Positions 1,563 through 51,964 of a stretch of DNA of 64,000 bases are shown one piece after another. Positions within the stretch are counted from its first letter, which is position 1; each line of letters opens with the position of its first letter. The notes under the pieces are model-generated. The model did no database searches. It saw nothing but the letters and a program-made list of their open reading frames with translations, and was not told the origin of the DNA. The position numbers and the translations under genes were made by a program. The stretch lies in the IMG/VR virus record IMGVR_UViG_3300027770_000025, positions 284,583-348,582 of that record; one strand, 5' to 3'.

Positions 1563-3434
1563 TTAATTTCCTTCCGGACCTAAAGTATCAGGTAAATCGT
1601 CAATCTGGCTATTCCATAAGCCGGTCGATAATGCTTGATCCGGGGTATCCTCGCTAAGTACGTTTCCTGCTACATCAGCAAATGCACCAAAGCTTTGTAA
1701 GTTAGCAGATGTTTTTTGAGTGCTATGATAAAGTCTTCCGTCCCCTCTATTGAATATGCTTTCAATCTCACCCCTTTCCCTGCTTCTTGCGTGTTTGAGT
1801 GTGAATGTTGCTTTCATAGTAGTTGGAAAATCATCAGGTCCTAGCGTGTCACCAAATCCAATAGTAACACCATCACATATTAAATTTCCAATCATTGCAA
1901 TAGGATTACATGGATTGCCTATAACTACATGCCATTCTCCTATTGGTGCTCCTGTTAAAAAGCTTAAAGGTGCTTGGTACTTCTCTATAAATTCACCAGT
2001 CATAGCTGTTTTCAAGAATCTAGAAGCATCGTCGCCTAAAGCATTTGTTATTTCTGCTAGTGTATCTGATATATTATTTCCTGAATTTTTACCCAATCTT
2101 GTATAGATCTCCTTTATCTTAGCAATCGATGCCTCGTCGGTTCCCCCCTGGTCTCCACCTACAGTTTCTGGTGTCTCCGATGAATCGCTACCCCCTGTGA
2201 CGTTAGCTATCTTGGATCCATAGGTAAGTAACCATCCCATAGGATCTTTATAGTATTCTTGAAGCCCCTCATCTCCACCAGGAAATCCTATGGCAGGAAA
2301 GTTGCTGTTATATCTAATATCCGGAGTTAAAAAATTACCATAATTTGTACCGATCGATAAAAGATTACCCATTAAATCCAAAAAAGCAGCTTTACTATTA
2401 ACCTCACCAACTGAGCTTAATTCATATTCAAATATTAGACTTAATCCCTCCCATGTAAAACTAAGACCTGTACCTCTGGTATATCCATCGGTAACAACAT
2501 CAACAGGGGTCCAGATATATTCCCCCATTATACCAGCTCTTTCCTTAGCAAGATCTCTTAGCCCCTTAGCTCTTATACCCTTAGATATTGTTTCATCCTC
2601 GTCAGTTGCAATCATGATTCCTTCAGAAAGAGCTGCAGTCGCATCAAAAGCATTACCCATGTCTTCAGATATTTTCTGCATAGCGCCGCCAAAAAATTTA
2701 ATTGGGCCATCCTGGAAAAATCCCTTAGAAAAAGCTTCCTGTACTAAAGTAGCTCCCTGAGAACTTGTGCTCCATACTATGCCTGTACTAAATGTAATAA
2801 GCTCGGTTAGAGCATTTCCCGTATTACCTCCAAACCAGGTAACTGCCTGTGCAACAGGTCTTCCTGCTCCCCCTGCATGATATGATTCGCTGCTTTTAAT
2901 ACTATTCTTTTCGCCAGGTACAGAAAGATTATCCAAAACTGGTGTGGGAAATCTTCTCAGGGTTATCATATAGTTATTCGGGATAGTACCATAGTATTTA
3001 CAGTACAAGAAGTCTTTCCAGTAGTAAGGTGCAGAAAGTCCGCCTATTATTGATCCCTCAACGCTACCAAGAAGACCACTTAATATTCCAGTGTTCACGT
3101 CGGCTACTGATTCGAATGTTGCAGTTTCTCTAACAAGAAAACCCGCTGTTGGATTTTTAGATTGTATTGAAGATACCCTAGTGTTATAGTCGGAAGATTC
3201 TGATCTGTAATAAGCATCAATGAAATCGTTTCCCCCGCTTCCTAGCGAATAAAAAAGATATTGCCCATATTTTCCAGGATTCCTCTTAGAAGCCTCGTAG
3301 AATAAACTCCTGGCAGTTGGACCCTTATATGGATTATTAGAACCTAGATTGCTTGCTTCCGATATAATATCATTAGCAGTACCCTGAAGCGTTGCTTCAT
3401 AGAGTAAACCAATCTTTTGCTTATCTGCTGGCAT
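1563..3434 (-). CDS. Putative baseplate/tail-tube initiator protein (gp48/gp54-like)
   Basis: C-terminal IGNLICDGVTIGFGDTLGPDDFPTTMKATFTLKH resembles tube-fold initiator C-termini; context. Confidence 0.45.
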   Translation of the reverse strand: MPADKQKIGLLYEATLQGTANDIISEASNLGSNNPYKGPTARSLFYEASKRNPGKYGQYLFYSLGSGGNDFIDAYYRSESSDYNTRVSSIQSKNPTAGFLVRETATFESVADVNTGILSGLLGSVEGSIIGGLSAPYYWKDFLYCKYYGTIPNNYMITLRRFPTPVLDNLSVPGEKNSIKSSESYHAGGAGRPVAQAVTWFGGNTGNALTELITFSTGIVWSTSSQGATLVQEAFSKGFFQDGPIKFFGGAMQKISEDMGNAFDATAALSEGIMIATDEDETISKGIRAKGLRDLAKERAGIMGEYIWTPVDVVTDGYTRGTGLSFTWEGLSLIFEYELSSVGEVNSKAAFLDLMGNLLSIGTNYGNFLTPDIRYNSNFPAIGFPGGDEGLQEYYKDPMGWLLTYGSKIANVTGGSDSSETPETVGGDQGGTDEASIAKIKEIYTRLGKNSGNNISDTLAEITNALGDDASRFLKTAMTGEFIEKYQAPLSFLTGAPIGEWHVVIGNPCNPIAMIGNLICDGVTIGFGDTLGPDDFPTTMKATFTLKHARSRERGEIESIFNRGDGRLYHSTQKTSANLQSFGAFADVAGNVLSEDTPDQALSTGLWNSQIDDLPDTLGPEGN

Positions 3435-3786: not shown

Positions 3787-4065
3787 TTAACTATTTTCTA
3801 TTTTGTCCCAATCTTTGCTTAATAGCATCGAATGAAAGCTATCATATTCGTTGGATTCGTTTCGGTAGGTAAATATTTCGTTATCTACAATGCTATTAGG
3901 TGTTTCTTTCTTCTGATTGATTATCTGTTGATTCTTCATATCCTGTAAATTTTGTCTATGAATCTCGTTTCCTGCCTCTATGCTGGAAAAATGTGAAAAT
4001 TGTTTATTTGGCTTAAGTAAACCAAACTGTCTGAGTAGCTTTCTTCTCTCTCTTCTATTTTCCAT
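3787..4065 (-). CDS. Hypothetical protein (basic N-terminus NRRERRK)
   Basis: ORF packed in operon. Confidence 0.7.
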   Translation of the reverse strand: MENRRERRKLLRQFGLLKPNKQFSHFSSIEAGNEIHRQNLQDMKNQQIINQKKETPNSIVDNEIFTYRNESNEYDSFHSMLLSKDWDKIENS

Positions 4066-4081
4066 TTATAATTTATTTATT

Positions 4082-4669
4082 TTAGATATCTACGCTAAAT
4101 CCTTTTGATTTACCAAAAGTTGAATCGTCTCTATTATAAAGATCCATGCCAACTACAAACTTAAAAAGTTTTAAAAATATTGCAGGGACAAATACGTCTT
4201 TTGCTTTAACCACGTCGTTAGCAGGAATGAAAATGAACTCTGATAATCTTTCCGATTCTGTCCCATCTGTCGTAGGAGTACCCCTTTCTATTCCAGTGAC
4301 ATCAACACCAAAGCAAGGATGCTCCGCATCCACCATTTTAGAGGCCGTTACCGTGCCTAAAAAGTGCCACTTAGTGTTATCATCAATATCAAATCCTGAC
4401 TCTTCTTTTAGCTCTCTTTTAGCTGTTTCTAGGAAGTCCGGATCTTCGTCTTCTGCGGTACCTGATATTAGGCTAATCGAATATCCACCTTCCCTAAAAG
4501 GATTTTTTTCTTTAAGAACTCCTAGCATTAAGGGTAGTCCTTGATCGTCAGTAATAAAAGGTAAAATCACTACAGATTCTACTGTTGATCTTATTCCTAT
4601 TTTACCGTCTATCTCAACAACATCGAATCTTGGGGTTGTTAAAAGTATTTTTTCCTCAGGGTTATTCAT
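4082..4669 (-). CDS. NUDIX hydrolase
   Basis: Nudix box GTAEDEDPDFLETAKRELKEESG. Confidence 0.9.
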   Translation of the reverse strand: MNNPEEKILLTTPRFDVVEIDGKIGIRSTVESVVILPFITDDQGLPLMLGVLKEKNPFREGGYSISLISGTAEDEDPDFLETAKRELKEESGFDIDDNTKWHFLGTVTASKMVDAEHPCFGVDVTGIERGTPTTDGTESERLSEFIFIPANDVVKAKDVFVPAIFLKLFKFVVGMDLYNRDDSTFGKSKGFSVDI

Positions 4670-5330
4670 TGTCAGTTTCTTTATTATTTGTTACTAATGT
4701 TCTTTTATCTGATGCTCCAGGAGAAGGAGATTTAGATTTTTCCACCTTTTCGTAATAAGACTTTTTAATAGAATCAGCCAGAGAAGCTTTAATATCCTCT
4801 ATATCTACTCCATCTAAAACAAAGTCTATAATTTCTCTTTCCGCATCTTCAAAAGAACCTGATAAAACTGTATAAAGATCCTTAGGAGGAAGATTCAATT
4901 TTATTTTAATTGAAACATCAACCATGTTCTTTTTCTGTTTCTTCAGTAGCTTATATATCGGAGAATCGTTTTGTGAGATTTTAGAATCTTCGTATATGAT
5001 GGATGTAACCGTTGTCTGCTCATTCGGTCTCGTATGAATCTGCTGATTATTAACGGGAATGACCTGTGCAAGTTGTGCGGGTAGCATAATCACATACTCA
5101 TTAAGAAGCTCTGAATTTATTCTTTTCCCGCTCTGAAATTCTATAAATGAAATATCTCCATTTAATACGATGTCCTTGTATTTTTCATCGATTCCAATGT
5201 CATCCCCTTTGATCCACTGGTAATCAAATGAGCTATAATGTGAGCGAGCATCATTTATTGTTTGTTCACTTATTTCCATTTTTTTCTTTTTTTTATTCCC
5301 CTTATTAAATAATGAAGATAATATCCCCAT
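4662..5330 (-). CDS. Hypothetical protein
   Basis: ORF overlapping the NUDIX start by 8 nt; the true start may be MEISEQ. Confidence 0.7.
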   Translation of the reverse strand: MGILSSLFNKGNKKKKKMEISEQTINDARSHYSSFDYQWIKGDDIGIDEKYKDIVLNGDISFIEFQSGKRINSELLNEYVIMLPAQLAQVIPVNNQQIHTRPNEQTTVTSIIYEDSKISQNDSPIYKLLKKQKKNMVDVSIKIKLNLPPKDLYTVLSGSFEDAEREIIDFVLDGVDIEDIKASLADSIKKSYYEKVEKSKSPSPGASDKRTLVTNNKETDNE

Positions 5331-42963: not shown

Positions 42964-43596
42964 TTAATGTTTCCCCTCCATCTTTTTTTTGATCCTACCC
43001 CTTGCTCTTCTTATTCGAGTAGCGATAGATCTTTTCTTAATGCCATACTTTTCTGCTATGTCCTTGTATTTCATACCATTAATCTCTCTGTCAATCATAA
43101 TATCTCTATAGGTATCAGGTAAAGATCTTATTTCATCTAAAACGGACTCATAAACAGAGTCAATGGTATTTTCCTCGCTAAAGAATCCATATGCTGGATC
43201 ATCCTCAATAGTATAAAATCCACCTATTTCTCCTATTGTGTTTTTAGAAGAAAGGTACTCTAAATCACCATCCTCATGAGCTATTAATCTCTTTCTAGAT
43301 TTCAGAAGTAATAGCGATTCATTTCTTGCTATGTTATAACACCATGTGGAAAAATTACCTCTCTCCATATCATATTGATCTATCTTTAGCCATATCTTGG
43401 ACATGGTATTAAGAAAAGAATCCTCTGCTAATTCCATATTTTTTAGAATCAAAAAACAATGGTTGGATACACCAGGTTTAAGTCTGTTAAATAAATCACT
43501 GAATGACTTGTCTGTTTTATTTAGAATGAAATCCTCTGCTAATGTCTGAATGTTTGTCTCTTTAATCTCCTTTACTTCTCTGTGTTCTTTTTGCAT
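42964..43596 (-). CDS. ECF-type sigma-70 factor
   Basis: Region 2 AEDSFLNT...FSTWCYNIARN; region 4 LPDTYRDIM...GMKYKDIAEKYG...SIATRIRRAR. Confidence 0.9.
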   Translation of the reverse strand: MQKEHREVKEIKETNIQTLAEDFILNKTDKSFSDLFNRLKPGVSNHCFLILKNMELAEDSFLNTMSKIWLKIDQYDMERGNFSTWCYNIARNESLLLLKSRKRLIAHEDGDLEYLSSKNTIGEIGGFYTIEDDPAYGFFSEENTIDSVYESVLDEIRSLPDTYRDIMIDREINGMKYKDIAEKYGIKKRSIATRIRRARGRIKKKMEGKH

Positions 43597-43598
43597 AT

Positions 43599-44204
43599 TT
43601 AGATTTGGTCAAATTGGTTAATTTTATATAATTCTATTCCAGCCTCTATTAGAAATGGAAGTGAATCTGGTTTTCTATAAACTTCTGAAAAAACTACTCT
43701 TTTTATTCCCGATTGTATTATCAATTTAGAACATTCAAAGCAGGGGGAAAGAGTTACATATATTGTAGATCCATCGGAACTTTGGGTACTCTTTGCAAGT
43801 TTTGTTATCGCGTTTGCTTCCGCATGAAGGACGTAGGGTAATGTAGCCATATTCTCATCCTCACAGATATTAGGAAATCCAGTTGGTGATCCATTATAGC
43901 CATCAGAAATTATTGATTTATCCTTTACCATTAAGCATCCCACCTGCATTCTTTTACAGTGAGAATTTTTTCCCCATGTATTAGCCATTTGTAAATAGAT
44001 AAGATCGTTTTTCATTGCCTTTGAATTTTCCCCATATAATGGGCTTTTTTGAATGGCATCGGAATGATCCCAGGAAATGTCAAAAGTTTTTCCTATTTTT
44101 TTGACGCTCCAATTATTTATGCTAAGGAAATCTGGATTGGAGAAATCAAAATCTTCTGAAACTATTTCTCGTCCTGAATAATGTGATAGTATAGATAACT
44201 CCAT
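43599..44204 (-). CDS. dCMP deaminase
   Basis: VGC, GYNG, HAEANAI, SPCFECSK; early promoter at 44221-44241. Confidence 0.9.
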   Translation of the reverse strand: MELSILSHYSGREIVSEDFDFSNPDFLSINNWSVKKIGKTFDISWDHSDAIQKSPLYGENSKAMKNDLIYLQMANTWGKNSHCKRMQVGCLMVKDKSIISDGYNGSPTGFPNICEDENMATLPYVLHAEANAITKLAKSTQSSDGSTIYVTLSPCFECSKLIIQSGIKRVVFSEVYRKPDSLPFLIEAGIELYKINQFDQI

Positions 44205-44268: not shown

Positions 44269-46023
44269 TTAGATCCTTCTAGAATCTGGTCTAAATGGTT
44301 GATCTATTGCTGAAACTGTTAACGGTCCTTCAAGAAGTCCTGCTATTCTGGTAAGTGCATTTTTTATATCCTGCATATCACTATTACTTTCTAATCCATT
44401 ATTACCAGATGCTGGTGTTTCTGATTTTTTATCGGTTCCAGATTTATCTGCAGCTGATTTCATTAAATCTGCGGATGGCTTTGTTTCTGCTGCCTTTGTT
44501 TCCTCTGGTGCTTCCTTATCTTTAGCTGCTTCTTTCTTTGCTAAAGGGTTAAGCTTTTTAACGTTATTTACTAAAGAAGGTGTTTCACCTATTTTAGATG
44601 CTGCCGAGGTTTCAGTAATCTTTTTACCGAGATCAGTTTTAGTTTCTTCCTTCTTTGAAAAGACCCCCTTTAATCCACCTTTCTTATCTATAACCCCTTT
44701 AAGAGCTCCGAGACCTTTTTTAGCAAATGGACTTGCAGCGCCAAGACTTTCCGTTGCTTTATCTGCAGCGGAAAATAAAGCATCCTCTGCGCCTCCTCCT
44801 ATTTTAGAAAGTAACGAAGATACTTTAGTCTCTTTCTTAACATCCTCTGCGCCTCCTCCTATTTTAGAAAGTAGCGAAGATCCTTTAGTCTCTTTCTTAG
44901 GACCCTCCTCAGCACTCTTTTCTTTTTTCCTCTTCTTAGGATTTACTACTTCTTCAGATTTTTTAAGTTCATCGGGTTTCTCTTTAGTTCCAGAGTCTAG
45001 AGTATCCGGTAGATTTTCTAATTTAGAATCGCTCTTATCCGATTTACCTAAGACTTGCTCTGCTGATTTATCCTCCGATTTTTCCTTGCTAATAAGTGAT
45101 TGCGTAGCTAGAAGTTTAGCTTTAGCTACCGCTAGCGAATTATAATAATCTTTATCCTTAGATAAATTCTTTAATATAGCTACCCATGTATTACTCCTAT
45201 TATTTAGATCCTCCCCACTCAATTTATTTTTTATCTCGAGATCTAAAGCCTCTTTCTCAATCTTAGTAATCTCACCATCTATTCCATCCTTTCCTTTACC
45301 GATTAACGAATATAGGGTTTCTACGATCTCACCTGTAGATTTTCTTGAATTATCGTCTTTAGCATTATCCTGAGCTTCTTCATACTTCTCAAGCAATCCA
45401 CTTAAATTCATATTTATGCCCTCGGAATCTATTAATCCCGGATCACTTGGATTACCAAAAAAGTTTAGACTACCTTCTTTGCTATTCTTTAAAAGAGAAC
45501 TAAACTCGGGAACGTTTTTTAATCCTTCCATTAGATCCTTAACGTTAATTGGGATAACACCAGCACCCTTTGGTAACTTAACTACCTCCGGACCATTTTC
45601 ACCAACCAAATATTTGCCTTCTTTCTTAGCAACCCCACCTTCCTGAAATGCTTTAATTATTCCCTTTAATCCCCCCGCGATATTACTGAAATCCTTATTT
45701 GGCCCTTCTCCGCCTTTAGAAACAGATCCTTTTGCCATTTCTGCTATTTTTCCCATAAGTGGGCCTTTCTCGCCAAGTAGTCCACTGATAGCTTTGGTAA
45801 GATCCTTTATTGCTCCTTCACCCTTCTCACTTTCTTTAGGATTAGCCGTAGAAGCCTTATTAGAGGTCGTAGCTGACTCCTTTTCGCTTTTTGTAGATTT
45901 ATCCGTTGATGATATAAGGGACTCTGTAGCGGAAGTATTTTTCTTAATAGACTCAGCTAGAGAATTTATATTCCTGCCAAGGTCGGCTATTTGGGAAAAT
46001 AATTTTTGATTAGGATCTGCCAT
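44269..46023 (-). CDS. Tape-measure-like protein (uncertain)
   Basis: Position after tail chaperones; FQEGG...YLVGENGPEVV motif common in TMP C-termini; low-complexity K/E/G-rich. Confidence 0.45.
   Translation of the reverse strand: MADPNQKLFSQIADLGRNINSLAESIKKNTSATESLISSTDKSTKSEKESATTSNKASTANPKESEKGEGAIKDLTKAISGLLGEKGPLMGKIAEMAKGSVSKGGEGPNKDFSNIAGGLKGIIKAFQEGGVAKKEGKYLVGENGPEVVKLPKGAGVIPINVKDLMEGLKNVPEFSSLLKNSKEGSLNFFGNPSDPGLIDSEGINMNLSGLLEKYEEAQDNAKDDNSRKSTGEIVETLYSLIGKGKDGIDGEITKIEKEALDLEIKNKLSGEDLNNRSNTWVAILKNLSKDKDYYNSLAVAKAKLLATQSLISKEKSEDKSAEQVLGKSDKSDSKLENLPDTLDSGTKEKPDELKKSEEVVNPKKRKKEKSAEEGPKKETKGSSLLSKIGGGAEDVKKETKVSSLLSKIGGGAEDALFSAADKATESLGAASPFAKKGLGALKGVIDKKGGLKGVFSKKEETKTDLGKKITETSAASKIGETPSLVNNVKKLNPLAKKEAAKDKEAPEETKAAETKPSADLMKSAADKSGTDKKSETPASGNNGLESNSDMQDIKNALTRIAGLLEGPLTVSAIDQPFRPDSRRI
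44781..44900. repeat. Tandem 60-bp in-frame duplication (KKETKxSSLLSKIGGGAEDx x2)
   Basis: 44781-44840 vs 44841-44900, 3 mismatches. Confidence 0.9.
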
Positions 46024-46061: not shown

Positions 46062-46292
46062 TTACTTACCAAAACTAAACAACTCTTTGACCCCGCTTTT
46101 AGCTTTCGCCTCTGCATTTTCAACTTCTATGGCATCATTGAGCTTATCTATCCATATCTGATATTCGTAGAAAGGTATGCTTTCTATCCAATCAGGATCC
46201 AGACTATGCTCCTTCCATAATCTAAACTTGATATCAAAGAAGTTCTCTAAAGATATCTGAAATAACGAAAAGAGATCTGATCCCGTAGGGAA
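46062..46292 (-). CDS. gp51-like tail/baseplate chaperone ORF, probably reached by +1 frameshift
   Basis: FPTGSDLFSLFQISLENFFDIKFRLWKEHSLDPDWIESIPFYEYQIWIDKLNDAIEVEN...; no ATG/GTG/TTG start; not in ORF track. Confidence 0.65.
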   Translation of the reverse strand, partial: FPTGSDLFSLFQISLENFFDIKFRLWKEHSLDPDWIESIPFYEYQIWIDKLNDAIEVENAEAKAKSGVKELFSFGK

Positions 46293-47331
46293 AGTTTATT
46301 CTAGCGGTGACCTCCATATCACCGCATACTGGGCACTTTTGTTTTACCTCTAGCTTCGTTCCCACTTTGATTTTCTGAGCAAGCTCAAAATACAAGCTAA
46401 ATTCTTCTTTGGTCCAATAATCGCTTTCTCTCATTCTGGAAAGGATCCTTTGGAAATTTAGATCCCTCCATTCGCTAAACATGAAAGGCGCTATATCAAG
46501 AAATCCATCATCAATATCAATATTTTTCTTAGCACATTCTGTTATGAATGAAGTTATTTCCTGGGTTACCCCTATACTAGGAATGTATAGTTCAACAGTC
46601 TTATCAAGTTTTTTAATGGTAAAAACAAAACCTCTGGTCTCTTCACTATAATACTTAGCAATATTTTCGTCAAGTTCATAAGAACTTAGTACGCCAGTTC
46701 TGAGTTCTATACCTTCATTGAAGGGACATTCTGGTGTTTGGTTGCATGATTTTTGCGGCTTAAGGATAATAGAGTTCTCGCCTTTAACGAACGTAAGATC
46801 TCTAATAGCCATGATTATAAAGAATCTATCTTCTTGCTTAAGATCTTTATAAGAAACCACCCCTTCTCCCGAAAATTCCATCCGAGAGCATCGATCTATT
46901 ATGTGAGTTAATTTTTCCTCTATGTCCAATTGATCATCTTCATCGATTGTGGAGAAATGTCTTATCTCTCTAACCTCAGCAGCTCTAATAGCAATTTTAG
47001 TTCCGTCCGGATAATATTTACCTTCCGATGGTAATATCCCAACCGGTATATTTTTCCAACCCATCTCTAATGATATAGGTTTATTTACACTTTGAGCTTT
47101 ACCTAAGGAAGCTAATTGTTGATCATATTGTATCTGATCGATCTTTGGTTGAACCGGTTGGGGAATAGCCTGCTGAACTTGTTGTTGAATTTGTTCAGTT
47201 CTAGCGGATAGCTCCTGTACCTGCGACACCACATTGGTTTCCTTTGCAATAGGCTGGGGATCATCATATTCTATACCCCCCGCAATTTCCTTTCTCTTAA
47301 GAATCTCTTCTGGTGAAATATTATTATCCAT
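46234..47331 (-). CDS. Baseplate hub assembly / tail assembly chaperone (gp26-like)
   Basis: LPSEGKYY, IRAAEVREI, DRFFIIMAIR, C-terminal CPVC; follows the tube genes. Confidence 0.7.
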   Translation of the reverse strand: MDNNISPEEILKRKEIAGGIEYDDPQPIAKETNVVSQVQELSARTEQIQQQVQQAIPQPVQPKIDQIQYDQQLASLGKAQSVNKPISLEMGWKNIPVGILPSEGKYYPDGTKIAIRAAEVREIRHFSTIDEDDQLDIEEKLTHIIDRCSRMEFSGEGVVSYKDLKQEDRFFIIMAIRDLTFVKGENSIILKPQKSCNQTPECPFNEGIELRTGVLSSYELDENIAKYYSEETRGFVFTIKKLDKTVELYIPSIGVTQEITSFITECAKKNIDIDDGFLDIAPFMFSEWRDLNFQRILSRMRESDYWTKEEFSLYFELAQKIKVGTKLEVKQKCPVCGDMEVTARINFPYGIRSLFVISDIFRELL

Positions 47332-47419: not shown

Positions 47420-47995
47420 TTACATAAACAAATCTTCCCAGTAATCACATATCCATGATGTGGTTACAGTGTAGATAGCTGGATTTTCGTAATCTAACTG
47501 CATATCATTAATGGCAGTACTGATAAAGCAAGAAGGTATTCTAATTCTTCTAAAAACATCCCCTCTTTTATTAAATATCGAGATAACCATAGAACCAACA
47601 TAATCGCTTTTAATACCCATCGCACCTGTTAGTGGATTGTATATTAAGTCGCTCCATTGTCTAAGTATCTTATAAACACTCATTGAATTTACGTCATTTA
47701 AGTTAACCTCAAATTCCATACTTAATGTCATATCACTAGTAGTAGGCTCACCTGCAGCATATCTTCTTTGAGCAAACTTATAAGTTTGTTCAATGTTCCC
47801 GTTTGCTAAAATATCTACGGCCAAACCAGTTATAGATTTAACCTGCTGAGCTAAAATTGATTCCCCTTTAAAAGTCGTGCTAGCATCTACTATTCCCGAC
47901 GGTGGCGTGATCAAAACCTCAAATTGGTTAAGATATACCGGTTCGTAGTTGTTTATCGCGGCTTTAGAGTTTGTATAATGTGGTAAACCTGCCAT
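47420..47995 (-). CDS. gp19: Tail tube protein (gp19-like), paralog 2
   Basis: EPVYLNQFEV, LRQWSDLIYNPLTG, CDYWED; follows sheath. Confidence 0.85.
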   Translation of the reverse strand: MAGLPHYTNSKAAINNYEPVYLNQFEVLITPPSGIVDASTTFKGESILAQQVKSITGLAVDILANGNIEQTYKFAQRRYAAGEPTTSDMTLSMEFEVNLNDVNSMSVYKILRQWSDLIYNPLTGAMGIKSDYVGSMVISIFNKRGDVFRRIRIPSCFISTAINDMQLDYENPAIYTVTTSWICDYWEDLFM

Positions 47996-48012
47996 TTATT
48001 TTTTTTATTTTT

Positions 48013-48567
48013 TTATAAGAATAAATCCTCCCAGTAATCAACTGCCCAAGTCATATCATCTATTTTAAATATATCAGTTGAGGTGTAATTAAGATTCATT
48101 TCACTTATTGCCTTAGTGGGATAGCAGTCTCTGCATGTTATTCTTCTGAAAACGTCTCCTTGTTTATTAAAGATAGAAACTACGATAGTACCTGTATAGT
48201 CATTCTTAAGACCCATTGCTCCTGTTAATGGATTATAGATCAAATCACTCCATTGTCTCAATGTTTTAAAAACGTACATTGAGTTGTCATCATTTAAGTT
48301 TACTGTGAAGCTTAAACTTAAATCCAGATAGGTATTATCAGGTTTAGGTCCAGCATAATTTCTTTTAGCAAACTTATACTTTTGAGTAGTTAGTCCTGGG
48401 TTTTTATCTAAGGTAAGTCCACCAACCTTTGACACGTGCTGAAGAAGTATCTCTCCACCCGCAACAGCAGAAGGAGGTATAACAGTAACCTCAAACTGGT
48501 TCAGATAAACAGGTTCGTATTTGTTTATTGCTGATAATGAATTTTGATAATGTGATAGTCCTGCCAT
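48013..48567 (-). CDS. gp19: Tail tube protein (gp19-like), paralog 1
   Basis: Same motifs; directly downstream of sheath. Confidence 0.85.
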   Translation of the reverse strand: MAGLSHYQNSLSAINKYEPVYLNQFEVTVIPPSAVAGGEILLQHVSKVGGLTLDKNPGLTTQKYKFAKRNYAGPKPDNTYLDLSLSFTVNLNDDNSMYVFKTLRQWSDLIYNPLTGAMGLKNDYTGTIVVSIFNKQGDVFRRITCRDCYPTKAISEMNLNYTSTDIFKIDDMTWAVDYWEDLFL

Positions 48568-48613: not shown

Positions 48614-51600
48614 TTATACGAATTGAATAAAGCCTCCCGCTGCTATACCACCTGTTCTGGTAACAGTAATTCTATTTATGAACTTCTGTATACCTCTAGC
48701 AGGTTCGATGATAACGTCTATGATTCCCATATTCATATCAATGATTGCTGGAGTGTTATTAGAAGCATCCATAACAGTTTGGTAGTTGTATATTCCACCG
48801 CCTGCTCTAACGCCATCTAGGTAGTTATCAACTAATGTTTTAATTTCAAGTCTAATTGAATCGTCATTAAAATCAAATAGGTAGTTAGAAAGAATTGACT
48901 GAACGTCTGTTTCGATACTTATTAAAAGGTCTCTTACGTGAACTAAGTTGAATGCAGAGTTAACTTGTTGATAAGCAGTTTGGTTACCAAAGATAACTAC
49001 CCCAATCCCTCTTCTCTTGATGATCGGGTTAATACCGAATGGTTCAAGATTTCCTCTGTCCTCATCGGTAAAGTCATATTCAACACCCACGATATTACCG
49101 CCTCCGCTTAGTATACCTCTTTTTTGACCTGCGATAATTGCATAAGGTTCTCCTGTAGCAAATTTTCTAACAAAGTTATTAGATACCATAGCAGCTGGTG
49201 GTACGTCTATATTTCTATTAGATTCCCTGATAGTAATATAAGGAGCGTAGAATGCAGCAAATTTAGATCCTTCTGCTTCACTAGGTAAACTGAAAGTATA
49301 AGAAGGATTTAGAGATAAGTTACCCCCGTCAACTATATAAGCAGTATTTAAACTTGGATAAGGATTAACAGCTGTAGGTGCGTTAGTAAATCTAGGATCT
49401 GTACTCTTTTGAAACTGAGCCATAGAAGGTGCGTTAATAAGAGCAAGCGATTGCTGTCTTATCATTGCCAATCTGCTTAACTGGTATTTAGAGTTAGGCA
49501 GAATTTGTCCAGAGAATGTATCTACTACGTATCTGAATGATATAACGTCCCTAGAAGCTAATGTCTGAGCAATATTTGTATCATACATAACATCTAGTAT
49601 GGTAGAAACTCTAGCATCAGTTCCGTTAGGTCTATGTGATTCTTTCATGGTAAATCCAGAGAGATAAGTGAAATCAAAAGATCTTGTAAATTGAGATATC
49701 GATGAGAATTTCTGAACTCTTGACATATTACCATTTCCTGAATAATAAAGAACTGGTCTAGCACATGTTGCTTTATAGGTTCCTGATGTAGTCGTAGAAG
49801 CAACTTTAGTGATCTTAGCTAATCTGCTTTGTTGATTGCCTGTTTCAGGTACGCAGATGTCAAGGTCAGTACATACTACCAAATCTCCAACCGACATAGG
49901 TACGTTTCCGTTTGCATCTTCTGTTATGTAGAATGATGTTGTGTCTATTCTAGTACAATCTACGAATTCATTAATCGATCCCTCTTGAGAAATTATATCG
50001 AATTTTTGCGATGATACCGCAGTACCGATATTATCAGAAGCATATGTTGCAGCGAATAATGCTATGTTATTTATAGTATTACCAGCTAAAGAAACGTTTG
50101 TGTGGGATCTTGTGTTAACGTAGTTGAATTGATCCCTATCTACTGTGTTTTCGAAAGTAAGGTAATTTACGCTTGTTCCCGCAGAGTTTAGCCAAATAAT
50201 ATCTCCGTCCATTATTTCGGTATATTTAACATTCTGGAATAATGTTGATGCGTTATAAGCTTGGAGAACTCTTGAGGTTCCAGTTGTAGCATTCGGACCG
50301 GTTACCCCATTAGGCGTAGGTACGTTGCTAACTAAATCTAGATAATCTGAATTACCGAATTGATAAGCGCTAGTGTAAAAAGGTTTAGCACTTCCTGAAG
50401 CTCCTGTATTATATGAGGTTACACTATAAACAGGAGATACCGTTATACCTTGAGATCTATAGTAAGATGTATCTAATGGATGGCTAAAGAATATTCTAAG
50501 CTCGTTATTGACGTCTTTAGTTCCGGTAACTTTAAGTTTAACCAAATCATGTAAAGAGAATTGGTTGATTAATGCTCCAGTTGCACCGGAGATACCTTCA
50601 ACTATACCCATTATGTATTTCTGGTCATCCGAAGAGTTAACAGTTAAGAAAGATTTTAGCTCATTCTTCTGTGTTGCATTTAATAAATAACCCGCAGTTC
50701 CACCTGTTCCTGATGTTTGGAGATAATGTAATCCCGCGTCATAAGCAGAAGAATCGTAAGGAGCAAAAGCTTGGTAAACAACTCCTGCTGTTGTACCTGC
50801 GTTGATTGCGAATAAAGTACCTGCTTTCATACCGGATGTGTATCCAGTAGCTCCTGTAGGACCCGCAAATCCACCAGCTCCAGTAACACCTATTACATTT
50901 TGTGTGTAAAGGTAATCTGCAACTAATGCCTGGTCATAACTTAGGAAGTTAATTGTAGGATTAGCTAAATCCCTGTCTCCCGATAATTCATCAATCAGGT
51001 GATTACCTACTAAATCTATTGTGTATGGATTAGTACAAATATTATCAAATGCTTCTTCGTCAATAGCACAGAATAAACCTGTTGCTGGCGAATTAGAATT
51101 TACTAAGGTTTGTATGTATTGATTAACACCATTAAGATCCACGAAGTCTGGAATTATACATCCTGTTACTGAGGTAACTATATTAACATCCTGTTGGCTA
51201 AGGAATGAATCAATTTGGCTTTTTATGAATCCGTTATTAGTAAAGTAGCTAGACCATTTTGGATCTAAAGCTAAAGCTGCATAATTTGTCCAATCCCCGG
51301 ATACTGCTATTACATCAATGAAATAATCCGAAATATAGTCGTAAGGGTGCATGAAAGTAGGAACGTTATTAGCTCCATACCAATCTAGTGCAAAAATATC
51401 AAAACCTTTTAAAGGTTTTGAAGAGTCAGTAGACTTTCTAGTAATCACACTGATAGGGGTTTTACCCAAGTTAGTTAAAGCAAATAGCTTTCCTGTGTCA
51501 GGTGTACTTAATGTAGCTAAGAAATATTTTGTATCTGCGTACCAGAATCTTTCTTTATTATAGTAAGATGAATATAACTCAGAAGTTACCACTCCGTTAT

Positions 51601-51964
51601 ATTGCTCGGTATCAAGAGAGTATGCTCTATATGTAACCTCATCTGCACTTCCAGTATCTGTGTCATTATTAAGCTTCAATAAATTTAAACCGAAAACCGG
51701 TCCAGTATTTAAACAGGTTAATATCGATCGGTGGAAGAAAGACCCCTTATTTTCTAAGGATCTATCAATGTCTCCAAACACAGAGATCATAGTAGTAGGA
51801 TCAGGAATGTATACAGGAGTATTGAAAGGTCCCTTATTAGAGAAACCCACAACCAATCTAATCGTTTGAGATGTTAGGATAACGCTTTGTGACGCGTCGA
51901 ATTCAAGAGTATAAACCCCTGAGGCTTTAAACTGTGAATAGTCTATTTTAACCTTATTTGCCAT
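48614..51964 (-). CDS. gp18: Contractile tail sheath protein (gp18-like) with large insertions
   Basis: SGVYTLEFD, VGFSNKGPFNTP, VPPAAMV, INPI, VRDLLISIE, LFDFND, IIEPARG; late motif at 51994-52001. Confidence 0.92.
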   Translation of the reverse strand: MANKVKIDYSQFKASGVYTLEFDASQSVILTSQTIRLVVGFSNKGPFNTPVYIPDPTTMISVFGDIDRSLENKGSFFHRSILTCLNTGPVFGLNLLKLNNDTDTGSADEVTYRAYSLDTEQYNGVVTSELYSSYYNKERFWYADTKYFLATLSTPDTGKLFALTNLGKTPISVITRKSTDSSKPLKGFDIFALDWYGANNVPTFMHPYDYISDYFIDVIAVSGDWTNYAALALDPKWSSYFTNNGFIKSQIDSFLSQQDVNIVTSVTGCIIPDFVDLNGVNQYIQTLVNSNSPATGLFCAIDEEAFDNICTNPYTIDLVGNHLIDELSGDRDLANPTINFLSYDQALVADYLYTQNVIGVTGAGGFAGPTGATGYTSGMKAGTLFAINAGTTAGVVYQAFAPYDSSAYDAGLHYLQTSGTGGTAGYLLNATQKNELKSFLTVNSSDDQKYIMGIVEGISGATGALINQFSLHDLVKLKVTGTKDVNNELRIFFSHPLDTSYYRSQGITVSPVYSVTSYNTGASGSAKPFYTSAYQFGNSDYLDLVSNVPTPNGVTGPNATTGTSRVLQAYNASTLFQNVKYTEIMDGDIIWLNSAGTSVNYLTFENTVDRDQFNYVNTRSHTNVSLAGNTINNIALFAATYASDNIGTAVSSQKFDIISQEGSINEFVDCTRIDTTSFYITEDANGNVPMSVGDLVVCTDLDICVPETGNQQSRLAKITKVASTTTSGTYKATCARPVLYYSGNGNMSRVQKFSSISQFTRSFDFTYLSGFTMKESHRPNGTDARVSTILDVMYDTNIAQTLASRDVISFRYVVDTFSGQILPNSKYQLSRLAMIRQQSLALINAPSMAQFQKSTDPRFTNAPTAVNPYPSLNTAYIVDGGNLSLNPSYTFSLPSEAEGSKFAAFYAPYITIRESNRNIDVPPAAMVSNNFVRKFATGEPYAIIAGQKRGILSGGGNIVGVEYDFTDEDRGNLEPFGINPIIKRRGIGVVIFGNQTAYQQVNSAFNLVHVRDLLISIETDVQSILSNYLFDFNDDSIRLEIKTLVDNYLDGVRAGGGIYNYQTVMDASNNTPAIIDMNMGIIDVIIEPARGIQKFINRITVTRTGGIAAGGFIQFV

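What the first reader, a model, noticed from the sequence alone, without database searches (positions are those of the whole stretch)
46062..46300. Start-less gp51-like ORF joined to the gp26-like chaperone by a probable +1 frameshift at TTT CCC
A 76-codon ORF resembling T4-like gp51 (LENFF...IESIPFYEYQIW...IEVEN) overlaps the gp26-like 3' end in the +1 frame. That frame opens just after a TAA at ...ATA AAC TTT CCC TAC (TTT CCC TAC at 46293-46285) and has no ATG/GTG/TTG start. TTT_C to TTC or CCC_T to CCT allows +1 slippage. Its position between the tube and TMP-like genes mirrors the lambda G/GT chaperone frameshift, but +1 and in a T4-like gp26/gp51 pair.
Basis: partly seen in the sequence, partly recalled or inferred. 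Interest (0 to 1): 0.65.

Follow-up and report, generated by a model that had tools for sequence, protein, structure and literature searches.

The report
+1 frameshift in phage tail chaperone
A huge phage most likely makes a long form of its tail-assembly chaperone by slipping the ribosome one base forward at TTT CCC, an unusual direction for a well-known phage trick, and one that gene callers miss.

Summary
On the minus strand a 365-codon gp26-like gene (46234-47331) is overlapped by 59 nt by a 77-codon +1-frame ORF (46062-46295). This ORF opens right after a TAA and has no usable start codon.

- TTT CCC is invariant.
- 22 of the 49 carry a +1-frame stop one codon before it.
- From TTT CCC to the frame-0 stop the DNA is dual-coding.
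- A stop-avoiding codon switch (xTA CGA versus xTC AGA/AAA) shows that the +1 frame is read just downstream of the hexamer.

The extension is homologous to the gp51-like ORFs of marine T4-like phages. There a -1 shift at T TTT TTY is inferred in 78 of 78 loci.

My own first idea, a prfB-like CTT_TGA site at the frame-0 stop, is rejected, and so is an alternative site at CTT TTC.

The expected products are a 365-aa short chaperone and a 422-aa chaperone-gp51 fusion.

That gp26 and gp51 are the T4-type tail assembly chaperones is already published (Vladimirov et al. 2022, which I could not read). The +1 direction, the UUU_CCC site and a conserved Shine-Dalgarno-like GAGGTC 15 nt upstream look new.

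There is no protein or RNA evidence.

The parts
46234..47331 (-). Frame-0 gene for the short chaperone (gp26-like, 365 aa). Stop TGA at 46236-46234.
   Evidence: ORF. Pfam PF12322 E 0.033; phrog_36717 E 1e-23; phrog_150 (baseplate hub) E 2e-3. AlphaFold model pLDDT 74; BFVD matches to baseplate hub subunit / hub assembly proteins at E 1e-9 to 1e-4.
46288..46293 (-). Proposed +1 shift site TTT CCC (TTT 46293-46291, CCC 46290-46288). tRNA-Phe would slip UUU to UUC and/or tRNA-Pro CCC to CCU. Either gives ...I-N-F-P-T-G-S-D...
   Evidence: Invariant in 49/49 distinct relatives while both flanking codons vary. TTT_C or CCC_N also occurs at the homologous codons in PAU, the LR7565xx phages, LR745206, Lak and MaF61. 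CCC is 11% of Pro codons, 3.9 per 1000.
46296..46298 (-). TAA in the +1 frame, one codon before the +1 TTC. It sets the 5' limit of +1 reading.
   Evidence: The same stop is present in 22/49 relatives in several sub-clades, and in LR756500 and LR756501.
46234..46292 (-). Double-coding overlap. Frame 0 encodes ...FPYGIRSLFVISDIFRELL*; the +1 frame encodes FPTGSDLFSLFQISLENFF.
   Evidence: Mean entropy at frame-0 third positions falls from 1.39 upstream to 0.36 and then 0.11. The remaining variation sits at +1 wobble positions. xTA CGA (5/5) versus xTC AGA/AAA (44/44) keeps the +1 frame open. No conserved RNA structure.
46062..46292 (-). +1-frame extension (gp51-like, small helical module). Stop TAA at 46064-46062. 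With residues 1-347 of frame 0 it gives a 422-aa fusion.
   Evidence: phrog_634 (baseplate hub assembly catalyst) E 1.8e-4. hhalign against marine gp51-like ORFs: 97.4%, E 1.4e-11, starting inside the overlap at SLFQISLENFF. Model with three helices, pLDDT 66.
46309..46315 (-). Shine-Dalgarno-like GGAGGTC (G + GAG GTC, coding E-V), 15 nt (5 codons) upstream of TTT. Role unknown; a possible stimulator.
   Evidence: GAG 50/50 and GTC 46/50 in the 50 listed family loci. Also present in PAU, LR756500, L090/93, LR756501/2 and LR745206. Expected by codon usage 2.4%; only 1 of 46 in-frame E-V dipeptides in the window's ORFs uses GAGGTC.
44269..46023 (-). Next gene: 584-aa low-complexity protein. A tape-measure candidate by position only.
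   Evidence: ORF. No Pfam or PHROG family. No similarity to T4 gp29. Only a sub-threshold atlas lead to a tape-measure cluster.
47420..48567 (-). Two tandem tail tube paralogs (47420-47995 and 48013-48567), directly upstream.
   Evidence: phrog_32623 at E 1e-33 and 1e-38; phrog_45 (tail tube); Pfam gp19 weak.
48614..51964 (-). Tail sheath, 1116 aa.
   Evidence: phrog_34521 E 8e-119; PF17482.

Best explanation
The gp26-like gene and the start-less gp51-like ORF form one recoded tail-assembly-chaperone gene. Most ribosomes read frame 0 to the TGA and make the 365-aa short chaperone. A fraction slip one base forward at UUU CCC (46293-46288). Either tRNA-Phe re-pairs from UUU to UUC while the rare CCC codon waits in the A site, or tRNA-Pro re-pairs from CCC to CCU. 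The protein is the same in both cases. These ribosomes read the +1 frame to TAA 46064-46062 and make a 422-aa fusion (residues 1-347, then P-T-G-S-D-L-F-S-L-F-Q-I-S-L-E-N-F-F...).

By analogy with lambda G/GT and T4 gp26/gp51, the two forms would act together on the tape-measure or hub protein during tail assembly.

Shown by sequence comparison: the geometry, the place where +1 reading begins, selection on both frames, and homology of both parts. Inferred: slippage as the mechanism, which of the two codons slips, the efficiency, and the function of the two products.
For: 1. There is no ATG/GTG/TTG in the +1 ORF, and a TAA lies one codon before TTC.

2. In 49 distinct relatives, TTT CCC is invariant in 49/49 although CCC is a rare codon and both neighbouring codons vary. 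In 22/49, spread over several sub-clades, a +1 stop sits one codon upstream and no start is available.

3. Frame-0 wobble entropy is 1.39 upstream of the hexamer, 0.36 from -57 to -40, and 0.11 from -39 to -1. The variation that remains is at +1 wobble positions.

4. Whenever the Ile/Leu codon at -45 ends in A, the next Arg codon is CGA (5/5; about 1% of Arg codons) instead of AGA/AAA (44/44). AGA there would create TAA in the +1 frame.

5. The +1 peptide SLFQISLENFF, encoded inside the overlap, aligns with SLENYF of marine gp51-like ORFs (hhalign 97.4%). (D/N)(L/I)FSL is kept in PAU, PTm1 and MaF61 through synonymous switches between codon families, while frame 0 changes non-conservatively.

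6. Four clades have no possible canonical start: part of the window's family, LR756500, L090-92 and LR756501. MaF61 has only ATGs that lie downstream of the conserved +1 motif.

7. Independent support for a fusion protein: in 78/78 loci of marine T4-like phages the gp51-like ORF follows an invariant T TTT TTY in the -1 frame without a start. T4 gp51 carries a gp26-like N-terminal part (BLASTP E 2e-6) and a gp51-core C-terminus.

8. UUU_C followed by a rare codon is a described +1 motif: UUU_CGN in amalgaviruses (PMC5052127), and in influenza PA-X (from my own knowledge).

9. The shift falls just after the last strand of the modelled fold (E340-344; pLDDT falls after residue 350).
Against: There is no protein, ribosome-profiling or RNA evidence.

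In-frame TTT CCC occurs 4 times in 28 ORFs of the window, so the hexamer alone is not a strong signal and the stimulator is not identified. No conserved RNA structure was found. The GGAGGTC element lies 17 nt from the shift codon, too far for the prfB type of stimulation.

In LR756500 and Lak the codon after TTT is the common CAA, so a slow A-site codon is not universal.

Some distant relatives have in-frame starts (PAU, PTm1, MA9V-2, LR756504, Lak) and may express the ORF independently.

Invariance of TTT CCC could partly reflect a need for Phe-Pro in both frames.
Confidence: 0.8

Rival explanations
1. The gp51-like ORF is a separate small protein, started at a non-canonical codon just after the TAA (for example ACG 46286-46284) or further inside the overlap (ATA 46256-46254).
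For: T4 gene 26 has an annotated internal product, 26'; from my own knowledge it starts at AUU. A Shine-Dalgarno-like GGAGGTC lies upstream. Several distant relatives have ordinary starts in the +1 frame: PAU has TAAGGAGcgtATGATG, MaF61 has ATGATGAGTAA, and MA9V-2 has a GTG.
Against: The codon at the ACG position is the most variable one in the region: the +1 residue is T, E, A, K, R, Q or P. No near-cognate start is conserved between the TAA and the conserved +1 peptide. GGAGGTC is 23 nt or more from any such codon. ATA lies downstream of conserved +1 residues and of the stop-avoidance site.
Confidence: 0.07
2. The shift occurs 7 codons further on, at TCT CTT TTC (46275-46267). It would be either +1 (CUU to UUU) or a tandem -2 slip (CUU to CUC and UUC to UUU), at the position homologous to the marine T TTT TTC site.
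For: CTT TTC is invariant and T-rich. It aligns with the marine slippery heptamer (GLQDFF / GIRSLF). The strictest double coding starts at -39. The tandem -2 re-pairing would be perfect.
Against: Stop avoidance at -45 to -40 (xTA CGA) shows that the +1 frame is already being read upstream of this site. TTT CCC and the codons GGG ATC carry extra constraint upstream of it. L090-93 (TTA TTC) and Lak (ATA TTC) cannot slip here, yet they keep the arrangement.
Confidence: 0.05
3. A prfB-like +1 shift at the end of the gene, CTT_TGA (46239-46234). This would give the full 365 aa plus DIKFRLW...
For: CTT TGA T resembles the RF2 site CUU UGA C. The last codon is CTT (or TTT/ATT) and the stop is TGA in 75/79 relatives, while the previous Leu codon varies between CTT, CTA and TTA. 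TGA is a rare stop here, 3 of 28.
Against: The conservation is explained by the +1 codons TTT GAT (F-D). The +1 peptide encoded upstream of the TGA (SLFQISLENFF) is homologous to marine gp51 sequence and under selection, so +1 reading starts earlier. LR756500 uses CTT TAA, and L057/L059 have no stop there.
Confidence: 0.03
4. The two frames are joined at the nucleic-acid level, by an assembly indel, transcriptional slippage or RNA editing, rather than by the ribosome.
For: No reads could be examined.
Against: 49 distinct, independently assembled sequences keep the same two-frame structure with a conserved frame-0 tail and stop. TTTCCC has no homopolymer run long enough for polymerase slippage (established knowledge). 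Both frames are under selection in the overlap, which a single joined frame would not need.
Confidence: 0.02

Closest known systems
T4 gp26 / gp51 as tail assembly chaperones (Vladimirov, Gautam & Davidson, Virology 2022; known to me only through citing papers PMC10885494 and PMC12846349), and the gp26-gp51 pair of marine T4-like phages
   Same: Same protein families. The gp26-like fold is supported. The gp51 core matches the marine ORFs at 97% by profile. The marine gp26 profile matches T4 gp26 at E 1e-11, and the marine gp51-like profile matches the T4 gp51 C-terminus at E 6e-5. The logic is also the same: a short form plus a long form that shares its N-terminal part.
   Different: T4 uses two divergent genes; gp51 carries its own gp26-like N-terminal part. 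In the marine T4-likes and KVP40 the second ORF lies in the -1 frame behind T TTT TTY, 0-8 codons before the stop. The window uses the +1 frame and TTT CCC, 19 codons before the stop, with a 59-nt double-coding overlap.
Lambda G/GT, P2 E/E+E' and other tail-assembly-chaperone frameshifts (Levin et al. 1993; Xu, Hendrix & Duda 2004; from my own knowledge)
   Same: The gene lies between the tail tube gene and a large following gene. There are two products with a common N-terminus, and the second ORF has no start. [quoted passage not shown]
   Different: The direction here is +1, whereas -1 is the rule there. No sequence or fold relation to gpG was tested or found. The tape-measure identity of the next gene is not shown.
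UUU_CGN +1 frameshift motif of plant amalgaviruses (PMC5052127) and influenza A PA-X (my knowledge)
   Same: A P-site UUU followed by C allows UUU to UUC re-pairing, with a rare codon next. MaF61 has exactly TTT CGA; the window has the rare CCC.
   Different: Those are eukaryotic RNA viruses with CGN as the slow codon. Here it is a bacterial ribosome with CCC, CAA, CCT or CGA depending on the clade.
prfB (RF2) +1 frameshift, CUU UGA C with an upstream Shine-Dalgarno-like element (my knowledge)
   Same: A +1 shift in bacteria, with a conserved Shine-Dalgarno-like sequence upstream.
   Different: No stop codon sits in the A site here. The SD-like element is 17 nt away rather than 3 nt. The look-alike CTT TGA at the end of this gene is not the site.
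Listeria phage PSA +1 frameshifts in capsid and tail genes at CCC UGA (Zimmer et al. 2003; my knowledge)
   Same: A +1 shift in phage structural genes, on a proline CCC codon.
   Different: The PSA sites are at the stop codon of the upstream frame and in different genes.

Membership tests
T4 gp26 family (Pfam PF12322 T4_baseplate; 'baseplate hub subunit' / hub assembly chaperone) | Sequence match to the family profile above the curated threshold | tested here: inconclusive
   PF12322 scores 14.3 bits (E 0.033) against a cut-off of 24.5, but the match is collinear over 101-339. phrog_150 E 2e-3. hhalign of the superfamily alignment against marine gp26: E 1.4e-3, probability 18%. No direct signal to T4 gp26.
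T4 gp26 family (Pfam PF12322 T4_baseplate; 'baseplate hub subunit' / hub assembly chaperone) | Same fold as family members | tested here: met
   AlphaFold model: pLDDT 74, and above 90 over most of 90-330. Foldseek against BFVD gave 44 matches at E <= 1e-3, including proteins named baseplate hub subunit, baseplate hub assembly protein (T4-like) and hub assembly chaperone, at E 2e-9 to 6e-4 and target TM about 0.5-0.6. This compares one prediction with other predictions; no solved structure exists.
T4 gp26 family (Pfam PF12322 T4_baseplate; 'baseplate hub subunit' / hub assembly chaperone) | C-terminal CxxC ... G-(L/I)-(K/R)-x-(L/F)-F motif, as in T4 gp26 (CPECG...RGLKEFFEL) | tested here: met
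   The window has CPVCG...YGIRSLFVISDIFRELL. See the alignments.
gp51 core (phrog_634, 'baseplate hub assembly catalyst') | Homology of the +1 ORF to gp51-like proteins | tested here: met
   phrog_634 E 1.8e-4 over residues 10-68. hhalign against marine gp51-like ORFs: 97.4%, E 1.4e-11. The best BFVD match of the small model is P-HM1 Gp51, but at E 0.6.
gp51 core (phrog_634, 'baseplate hub assembly catalyst') | Direct relation to T4 gp51 itself | tested here: inconclusive
   The window-family profile against T4 gp51 gives no signal. The link is transitive only: the marine profile matches T4 gp51 residues 205-244 at E 6e-5, probability 65%.
Frameshifted tail assembly chaperone (G/GT type) | Located between the tail tube gene and the tape measure gene | tested here: inconclusive
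   The tube paralogs upstream are supported. The downstream 584-aa protein has no family match and no similarity to T4 gp29, so its tape-measure identity is positional only.
Frameshifted tail assembly chaperone (G/GT type) | Second ORF overlaps the 3' end of the first, has no start of its own, and the geometry is conserved | tested here: met
Frameshifted tail assembly chaperone (G/GT type) | Two products in a fixed ratio, both needed for tail assembly and absent from the virion | not testable with these tools
   This needs expression, mass spectrometry and genetics.
Programmed +1 ribosomal frameshift | P-site codon whose tRNA can re-pair in the +1 frame, conserved at the nucleotide level | tested here: met
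   UUU_C gives UUC and CCC_N gives CCN. Invariant in 49/49. TTT_C or CCC_N is present in 8 further clades.
Programmed +1 ribosomal frameshift | Slowly decoded A-site codon, or another stimulator | tested here: inconclusive
   CCC is rare in the phage, at 3.9 per 1000, but the host is unknown and some clades have CAA there. No conserved RNA structure was found. The conserved GGAGGTC sits at an untypical distance. The phage genome encodes no tRNA-Phe or tRNA-Pro.
Programmed +1 ribosomal frameshift | Trans-frame protein detected | not testable with these tools
No proteomic data are at hand.

The most novel reading that the evidence does not exclude
One chaperone family has solved the same problem in three ways: a -1 slip at U UUU UUY (marine T4-likes, KVP40), a +1 slip at UUU_CCC (this huge-phage group, including Lak-type and other megaphages), and gene duplication (T4). 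In the +1 lineages the invariant Shine-Dalgarno-like GAGGUC(ACC), 15 nt upstream, would be a new kind of long-range stimulator. It would act even in Bacteroidota-type hosts, whose ribosomes normally hide the anti-Shine-Dalgarno sequence.
Probability: 0.3. Interest if true: 0.7.

Novelty: new variant of a known kind. Interest (0 to 1): 0.55.

Why it matters
- Annotation. In this group of huge phages the long chaperone form is missed or started at the wrong codon. PAU gp94, PTm1 ORF-023 and Mosig gp51 are all annotated from internal methionines, and the Lak and LR75xxxx records carry no annotation at all.
- Recoding. It adds a well-conserved bacterial +1 site of the UUU_C type, so far documented mainly in eukaryotic RNA viruses. 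It comes with a natural series of variants (CCC, CAA, CCT, CGA) and a candidate upstream element that can be tested directly.
- Evolution. It shows that the need for a short and a long chaperone is older than the mechanism that delivers them. The shift direction and site changed while both protein parts stayed homologous.

Tried and rejected
1. My own first hypothesis was a prfB-like CTT_TGA shift at the frame-0 stop. It looked strong but is rejected, because the +1 peptide encoded upstream of the stop is conserved and homologous to gp51.

2. A shift at CTT TTC, including a tandem -2 slip, is rejected because of the stop-avoidance covariation upstream of it and because L090-93 and Lak cannot slip there.

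3. Downstream RNA structure: the window alone folds into a long hairpin (z = -2.0), but the consensus fold of 36 relatives is weak (-4.4 kcal/mol, no covariation). A GAGGUC:GAUCUC pairing around the site is not kept in PAU.

4. A frameshift-suppressor tRNA: the window has no tRNA. The 348.6-kb genome has 7 tRNAs, none for Phe or Pro. One is odd, with a 6-nt anticodon loop called 'Lys|Stop', but it bears no obvious relation to UUU or CCC.

5. Natural in-frame fusions among close relatives: none among the 120 listed homologs, which are 215-408 aa long. The in-frame equivalent is T4 gp51.

6. Tape-measure identity of the next gene: no support from Pfam, PHROGs, T4 gp29 or the atlas search.

7. 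PDB fold search for the gp26-like model found nothing.

Single-protein searches with PAU and PTm1 found only themselves.

10. Literature: six full-text searches found no paper on a gp26/gp51 frameshift. Vladimirov et al. 2022 surfaced only through a reference list and is not held.
Full report
**What is there.** The window is the last 64 kb of a single 348,582-bp contig of 36% G+C, that is, a huge phage. All genes around the finding lie on the minus strand, in this order:
- terminase;
- a 1116-aa sheath (48614-51964);
- two tube paralogs (48013-48567 and 47420-47995);
- a 365-aa ORF (46234-47331);
- the +1-frame ORF of the finding;
- a 584-aa low-complexity protein (44269-46023);
- dCMP deaminase and a sigma factor.

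Frame 0 ends ...ATA AAC TTT CCC TAC GGG ATC AGA TCT CTT TTC GTT ATT TCA GAT ATC TTT AGA GAA CTT CTT TGA. The +1 frame reads TAA ACT TTC CCT ACG GGA TCA ... and stays open for 77 codons, down to TAA 46064-46062. Its only canonical start is a TTG five codons before the end.

**What the two ORFs are.** The 365-aa protein gives only weak sequence matches to the T4 gp26 family: PF12322 E 0.033 and phrog_150 E 2e-3, both collinear. An AlphaFold model built on 33 homologs has mean pLDDT 74, and above 90 through most of residues 90-330. Among predicted viral structures it matches many proteins annotated as baseplate hub subunit or hub assembly protein/chaperone, at E 1e-9 to 1e-4. No solved structure resembles it.

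The +1 ORF matches phrog_634, 'baseplate hub assembly catalyst' (gp51), at E 1.8e-4. As a family profile it matches the gp51-like ORFs of marine T4-like phages with 97.4% probability, E 1.4e-11. Those marine ORFs in turn match the last 45 residues or so of T4 gp51 at E 6e-5. In T4, gp26 and gp51 are both listed as hub assembly chaperones (PMC3004832).

**Comparative evidence for where +1 reading starts.** A word search found 496 homologs, and 80 IMG/VR loci at 52-100% identity were fetched. In every locus that could be scored, the second ORF lies in the +1 frame.

Among 49 distinct sequences:
- TTT CCC is invariant, although CCC is only 11% of Pro codons here.
- The codon before it varies (ACC, ACA, AAC, AGC, AGT, GCC, TCC), and so does the codon after it (TAC, AAC, GGA, GGC, GAC, CAA, TCG, TCC, TCA, AGA).
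- In 22 of the 49, from several sub-clades, the +1 frame carries a stop exactly one codon before TTC. It arises from ATA A.., and no start is available.

Positional entropy shows ordinary frame-0 wobble variation up to position -58 (mean of positions 1/2/3: 1.06/1.05/1.39). It then drops sharply from TTT CCC onward: 0.60/0.28/0.36 for -57 to -40, and 0.35/0.01/0.11 for -39 to -1. The little variation left falls on frame-0 first positions, which are +1 wobble positions. Examples are ATC/CTC/GTC and GTT/ATT/CTT. After the frame-0 stop the pattern is that of the +1 frame alone (1.25/0.64/0.41).

The most telling detail concerns the Ile/Leu codon at -45. Wherever it ends in A, the following Arg codon is CGA (5/5). 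Wherever it ends in C, the following codon is AGA or AAA (44/44). ATA AGA would put TAA in the +1 frame, and CGA is about 1% of Arg codons in this phage. So the +1 frame is kept open, and therefore read, within four codons of the hexamer.

No conserved RNA structure accounts for the nucleotide conservation.

**Rejected sites.** I first favoured the end of the gene. CTT TGA T looks like the RF2 site, and it is nearly invariant while the preceding Leu codon varies. However, the +1 peptide encoded before that stop, SLFQISLENFF, is homologous to the SLENYF segment of marine gp51-like ORFs. The conservation is then simply that of the +1 codons TTT GAT.

A second candidate was TCT CTT TTC. It is homologous in position to the marine slippery heptamer and allows a perfect tandem -2 slip. 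It lies downstream of the stop-avoidance site, and it is not slippery in L090-93 or Lak.

**Other clades.** The homologous codons are:
- TTT CCC in Sphingomonas phage PAU, LR756501, LR756502 and LR745206;
- TTT CAA in LR756500 and the Lak phages (the Lak phages read with TAG=Q);
- TTT CCT in L090-93;
- TTT CGA in Flavobacterium phage MaF61;
- TAC CCC in LR756504.

So either UUU_C or CCC_N is present in all of these. LR756500, L090-92 and LR756501 have no possible canonical start. In MaF61 the only ATGs lie downstream of the conserved +1 motif LFSLFQ.

PAU, PTm1, MA9V-2, LR756504 and Lak do have in-frame starts, so independent initiation there cannot be excluded. PAU also has a perfect TAAGGAGcgtATGATG right after the frame-0 stop.

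The +1 motif (D/N)(L/I)FSL is kept in PAU, PTm1 and MaF61 through switches between Leu and Ser codon families, while frame 0 changes non-conservatively.

**The wider family.** A search with the gp26 of pelagiphage Mosig returned 80 loci, of which 78 could be scored. In 78 of 78:
- the gp51-like ORF lies in the -1 frame;
- an invariant T TTT TTC or T TTT TTT sits 0-8 codons before the gp26 stop;
- no start precedes the conserved FFRIALSHDSLENYF;
- in several loci the -1 frame opens only at FF.

tblastn finds this ORF overlapping the gp26 end in 566 phage records, covering cyanophages, pelagiphages, KVP40-like vibriophages, Sinorhizobium and Aeromonas phages. KVP40 has tube - gp26 (GAT TTT TTC GTA TAA) - small ORF - large ORF.

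In T4 the two genes are divergent. T4 gp51 residues 17-171 resemble gp26 residues 17-161 (BLASTP E 2e-6), and its C-terminus is the gp51 core. T4 gp51 is therefore the in-frame equivalent of the fusion.

Much of this is evidently published. Vladimirov, Gautam & Davidson (Virology 2022) is cited as showing two things:
- T4-like phages carry a short chaperone gene and a long fused one (PMC10885494);
- poly-T -1 signals occur in the short-chaperone (TAC-N) genes of T4-like phages (PMC12846349).

I could not read the paper itself. I do not know whether it covers +1 cases or these huge phages.

**Mechanism.** UUU followed by C lets tRNA-Phe exchange a G.U wobble pair for a G-C pair by moving one base forward. 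CCC_N likewise lets tRNA-Pro re-pair. A rare A-site codon (CCC here, CGA in MaF61) would give time for the slip. This is the logic described for UUU_CGN in amalgaviruses (PMC5052127) and for influenza PA-X (my knowledge). The protein is the same whichever codon slips: residues 1-347, then P-T-G-S-D..., 422 aa in all.

The junction lies just after the last beta-strand of the modelled fold. This matches other chaperone frameshifts, where the shift is near the C-terminus of the short form.

What drives the shift to a useful level is open. In-frame TTT CCC occurs three more times in 28 ORFs of the window.

One unexplained feature is a candidate. GAG GTC (E-V), usually preceded by G so that it reads GGAGGTC, lies exactly five codons upstream. 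It is invariant or nearly so in the family (GAG 50/50, GTC 46/50 of the listed loci). It recurs in PAU, LR756500, L090/93, LR756501/2 and LR745206. Codon usage predicts it only 2.4% of the time. Its distance from the shift codon (17 nt) does not fit the RF2 model.

**Limits.** Everything here is comparative inference. There is no protein or RNA evidence. The host is unknown; relatives infect Bacteroidota and, in the case of PAU, Sphingomonas. The tape-measure identity of the neighbouring gene is positional only.

**Verdict.** It is a +1 variant, at UUU_CCC, of the known chaperone frameshift, in the gp26/gp51 family, and it is conserved across a large group of huge phages.

Noticed in passing
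window 46309-46315 (minus strand): Shine-Dalgarno-like GGAGGTC (codons GAG GTC), exactly 5 codons upstream of TTT CCC. It is conserved at wobble positions in the family and in at least six distant clades, although codon usage predicts it in 2.4% of cases. Its function is unknown.
   Followed up: partly
genome G000:C1 46419-46493 (complement), outside the window: ARAGORN calls an odd tRNA, 'tRNA-?(Lys|Stop)(tt)', with a 6-nt anticodon loop. It sits next to tRNA-Cys. The genome also has a tmRNA at 200187-200650 and 6 ordinary tRNAs (His, Cys, Arg x2, Met, Lys).
   Followed up: partly
L094-L173 (marine T4-like phage contigs); L003 Mosig 3001-3186; L175 KVP40 1495-1680: The gp51-like ORF lies in the -1 frame behind an invariant T TTT TTY in 78/78 loci. 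Many have GAG GGN (GGAGGG) about 10 nt upstream, a dnaX-like spacing. GenBank records start gp51 at the internal Met of ALMQHH (44 aa in Mosig) or omit it altogether (S-CAM1).
   Followed up: partly
L001 PAU 3145-3282 (gp94); L002 PTm1 3148-3270 (ORF-023): The annotated small ORFs start at internal methionines. The conserved coding sequence begins about 140 nt further upstream, inside the preceding gene.
   Followed up: yes
L088 (T4) 3803-4429 (gene 26) and 4480-5229 (gene 51): T4 gp51 residues 17-171 resemble gp26 residues 17-161 (BLASTP E 2e-6). gp51 therefore looks like a gp26 paralog with the gp51 core added at its C-terminus. This agrees with what citing papers report from Vladimirov et al. 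2022.
   Followed up: partly
window 47420-47995 and 48013-48567 (minus strand): Two tandem tail tube paralogs (191 and 184 aa) with near-identical N-termini (MAGLPHYTNS... and MAGLSHYQNS...).
   Followed up: no
window 44269-46023 (minus strand): The 584-aa Lys/Glu/Ser-rich protein contains a direct repeat, KKETK(G/V)SSLLSKIGGGAED, twice in tandem. It has no family match.
   Followed up: no
window 42964-44204 (minus strand): A dCMP deaminase (PF00383, E 8e-25) and a sigma-70-type factor (regions 2 and 4) follow the tail genes directly.
   Followed up: no
L057 and L059/L060 (IMG/VR relatives): In these relatives the TGA is replaced (CTT GGC AAT TAA; CTT CGA CCT TAA), so frame 0 runs two codons longer. 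The +1 ORF and TTT CCC are unchanged.
   Followed up: partly
BFVD hits of the gp26-like model: Some structural relatives are 384-450 aa long (Myoviridae sp. ctNQV2, Achromobacter phage Motura, Ralstonia phage phiRSL1). They could be natural in-frame long forms.
   Followed up: no
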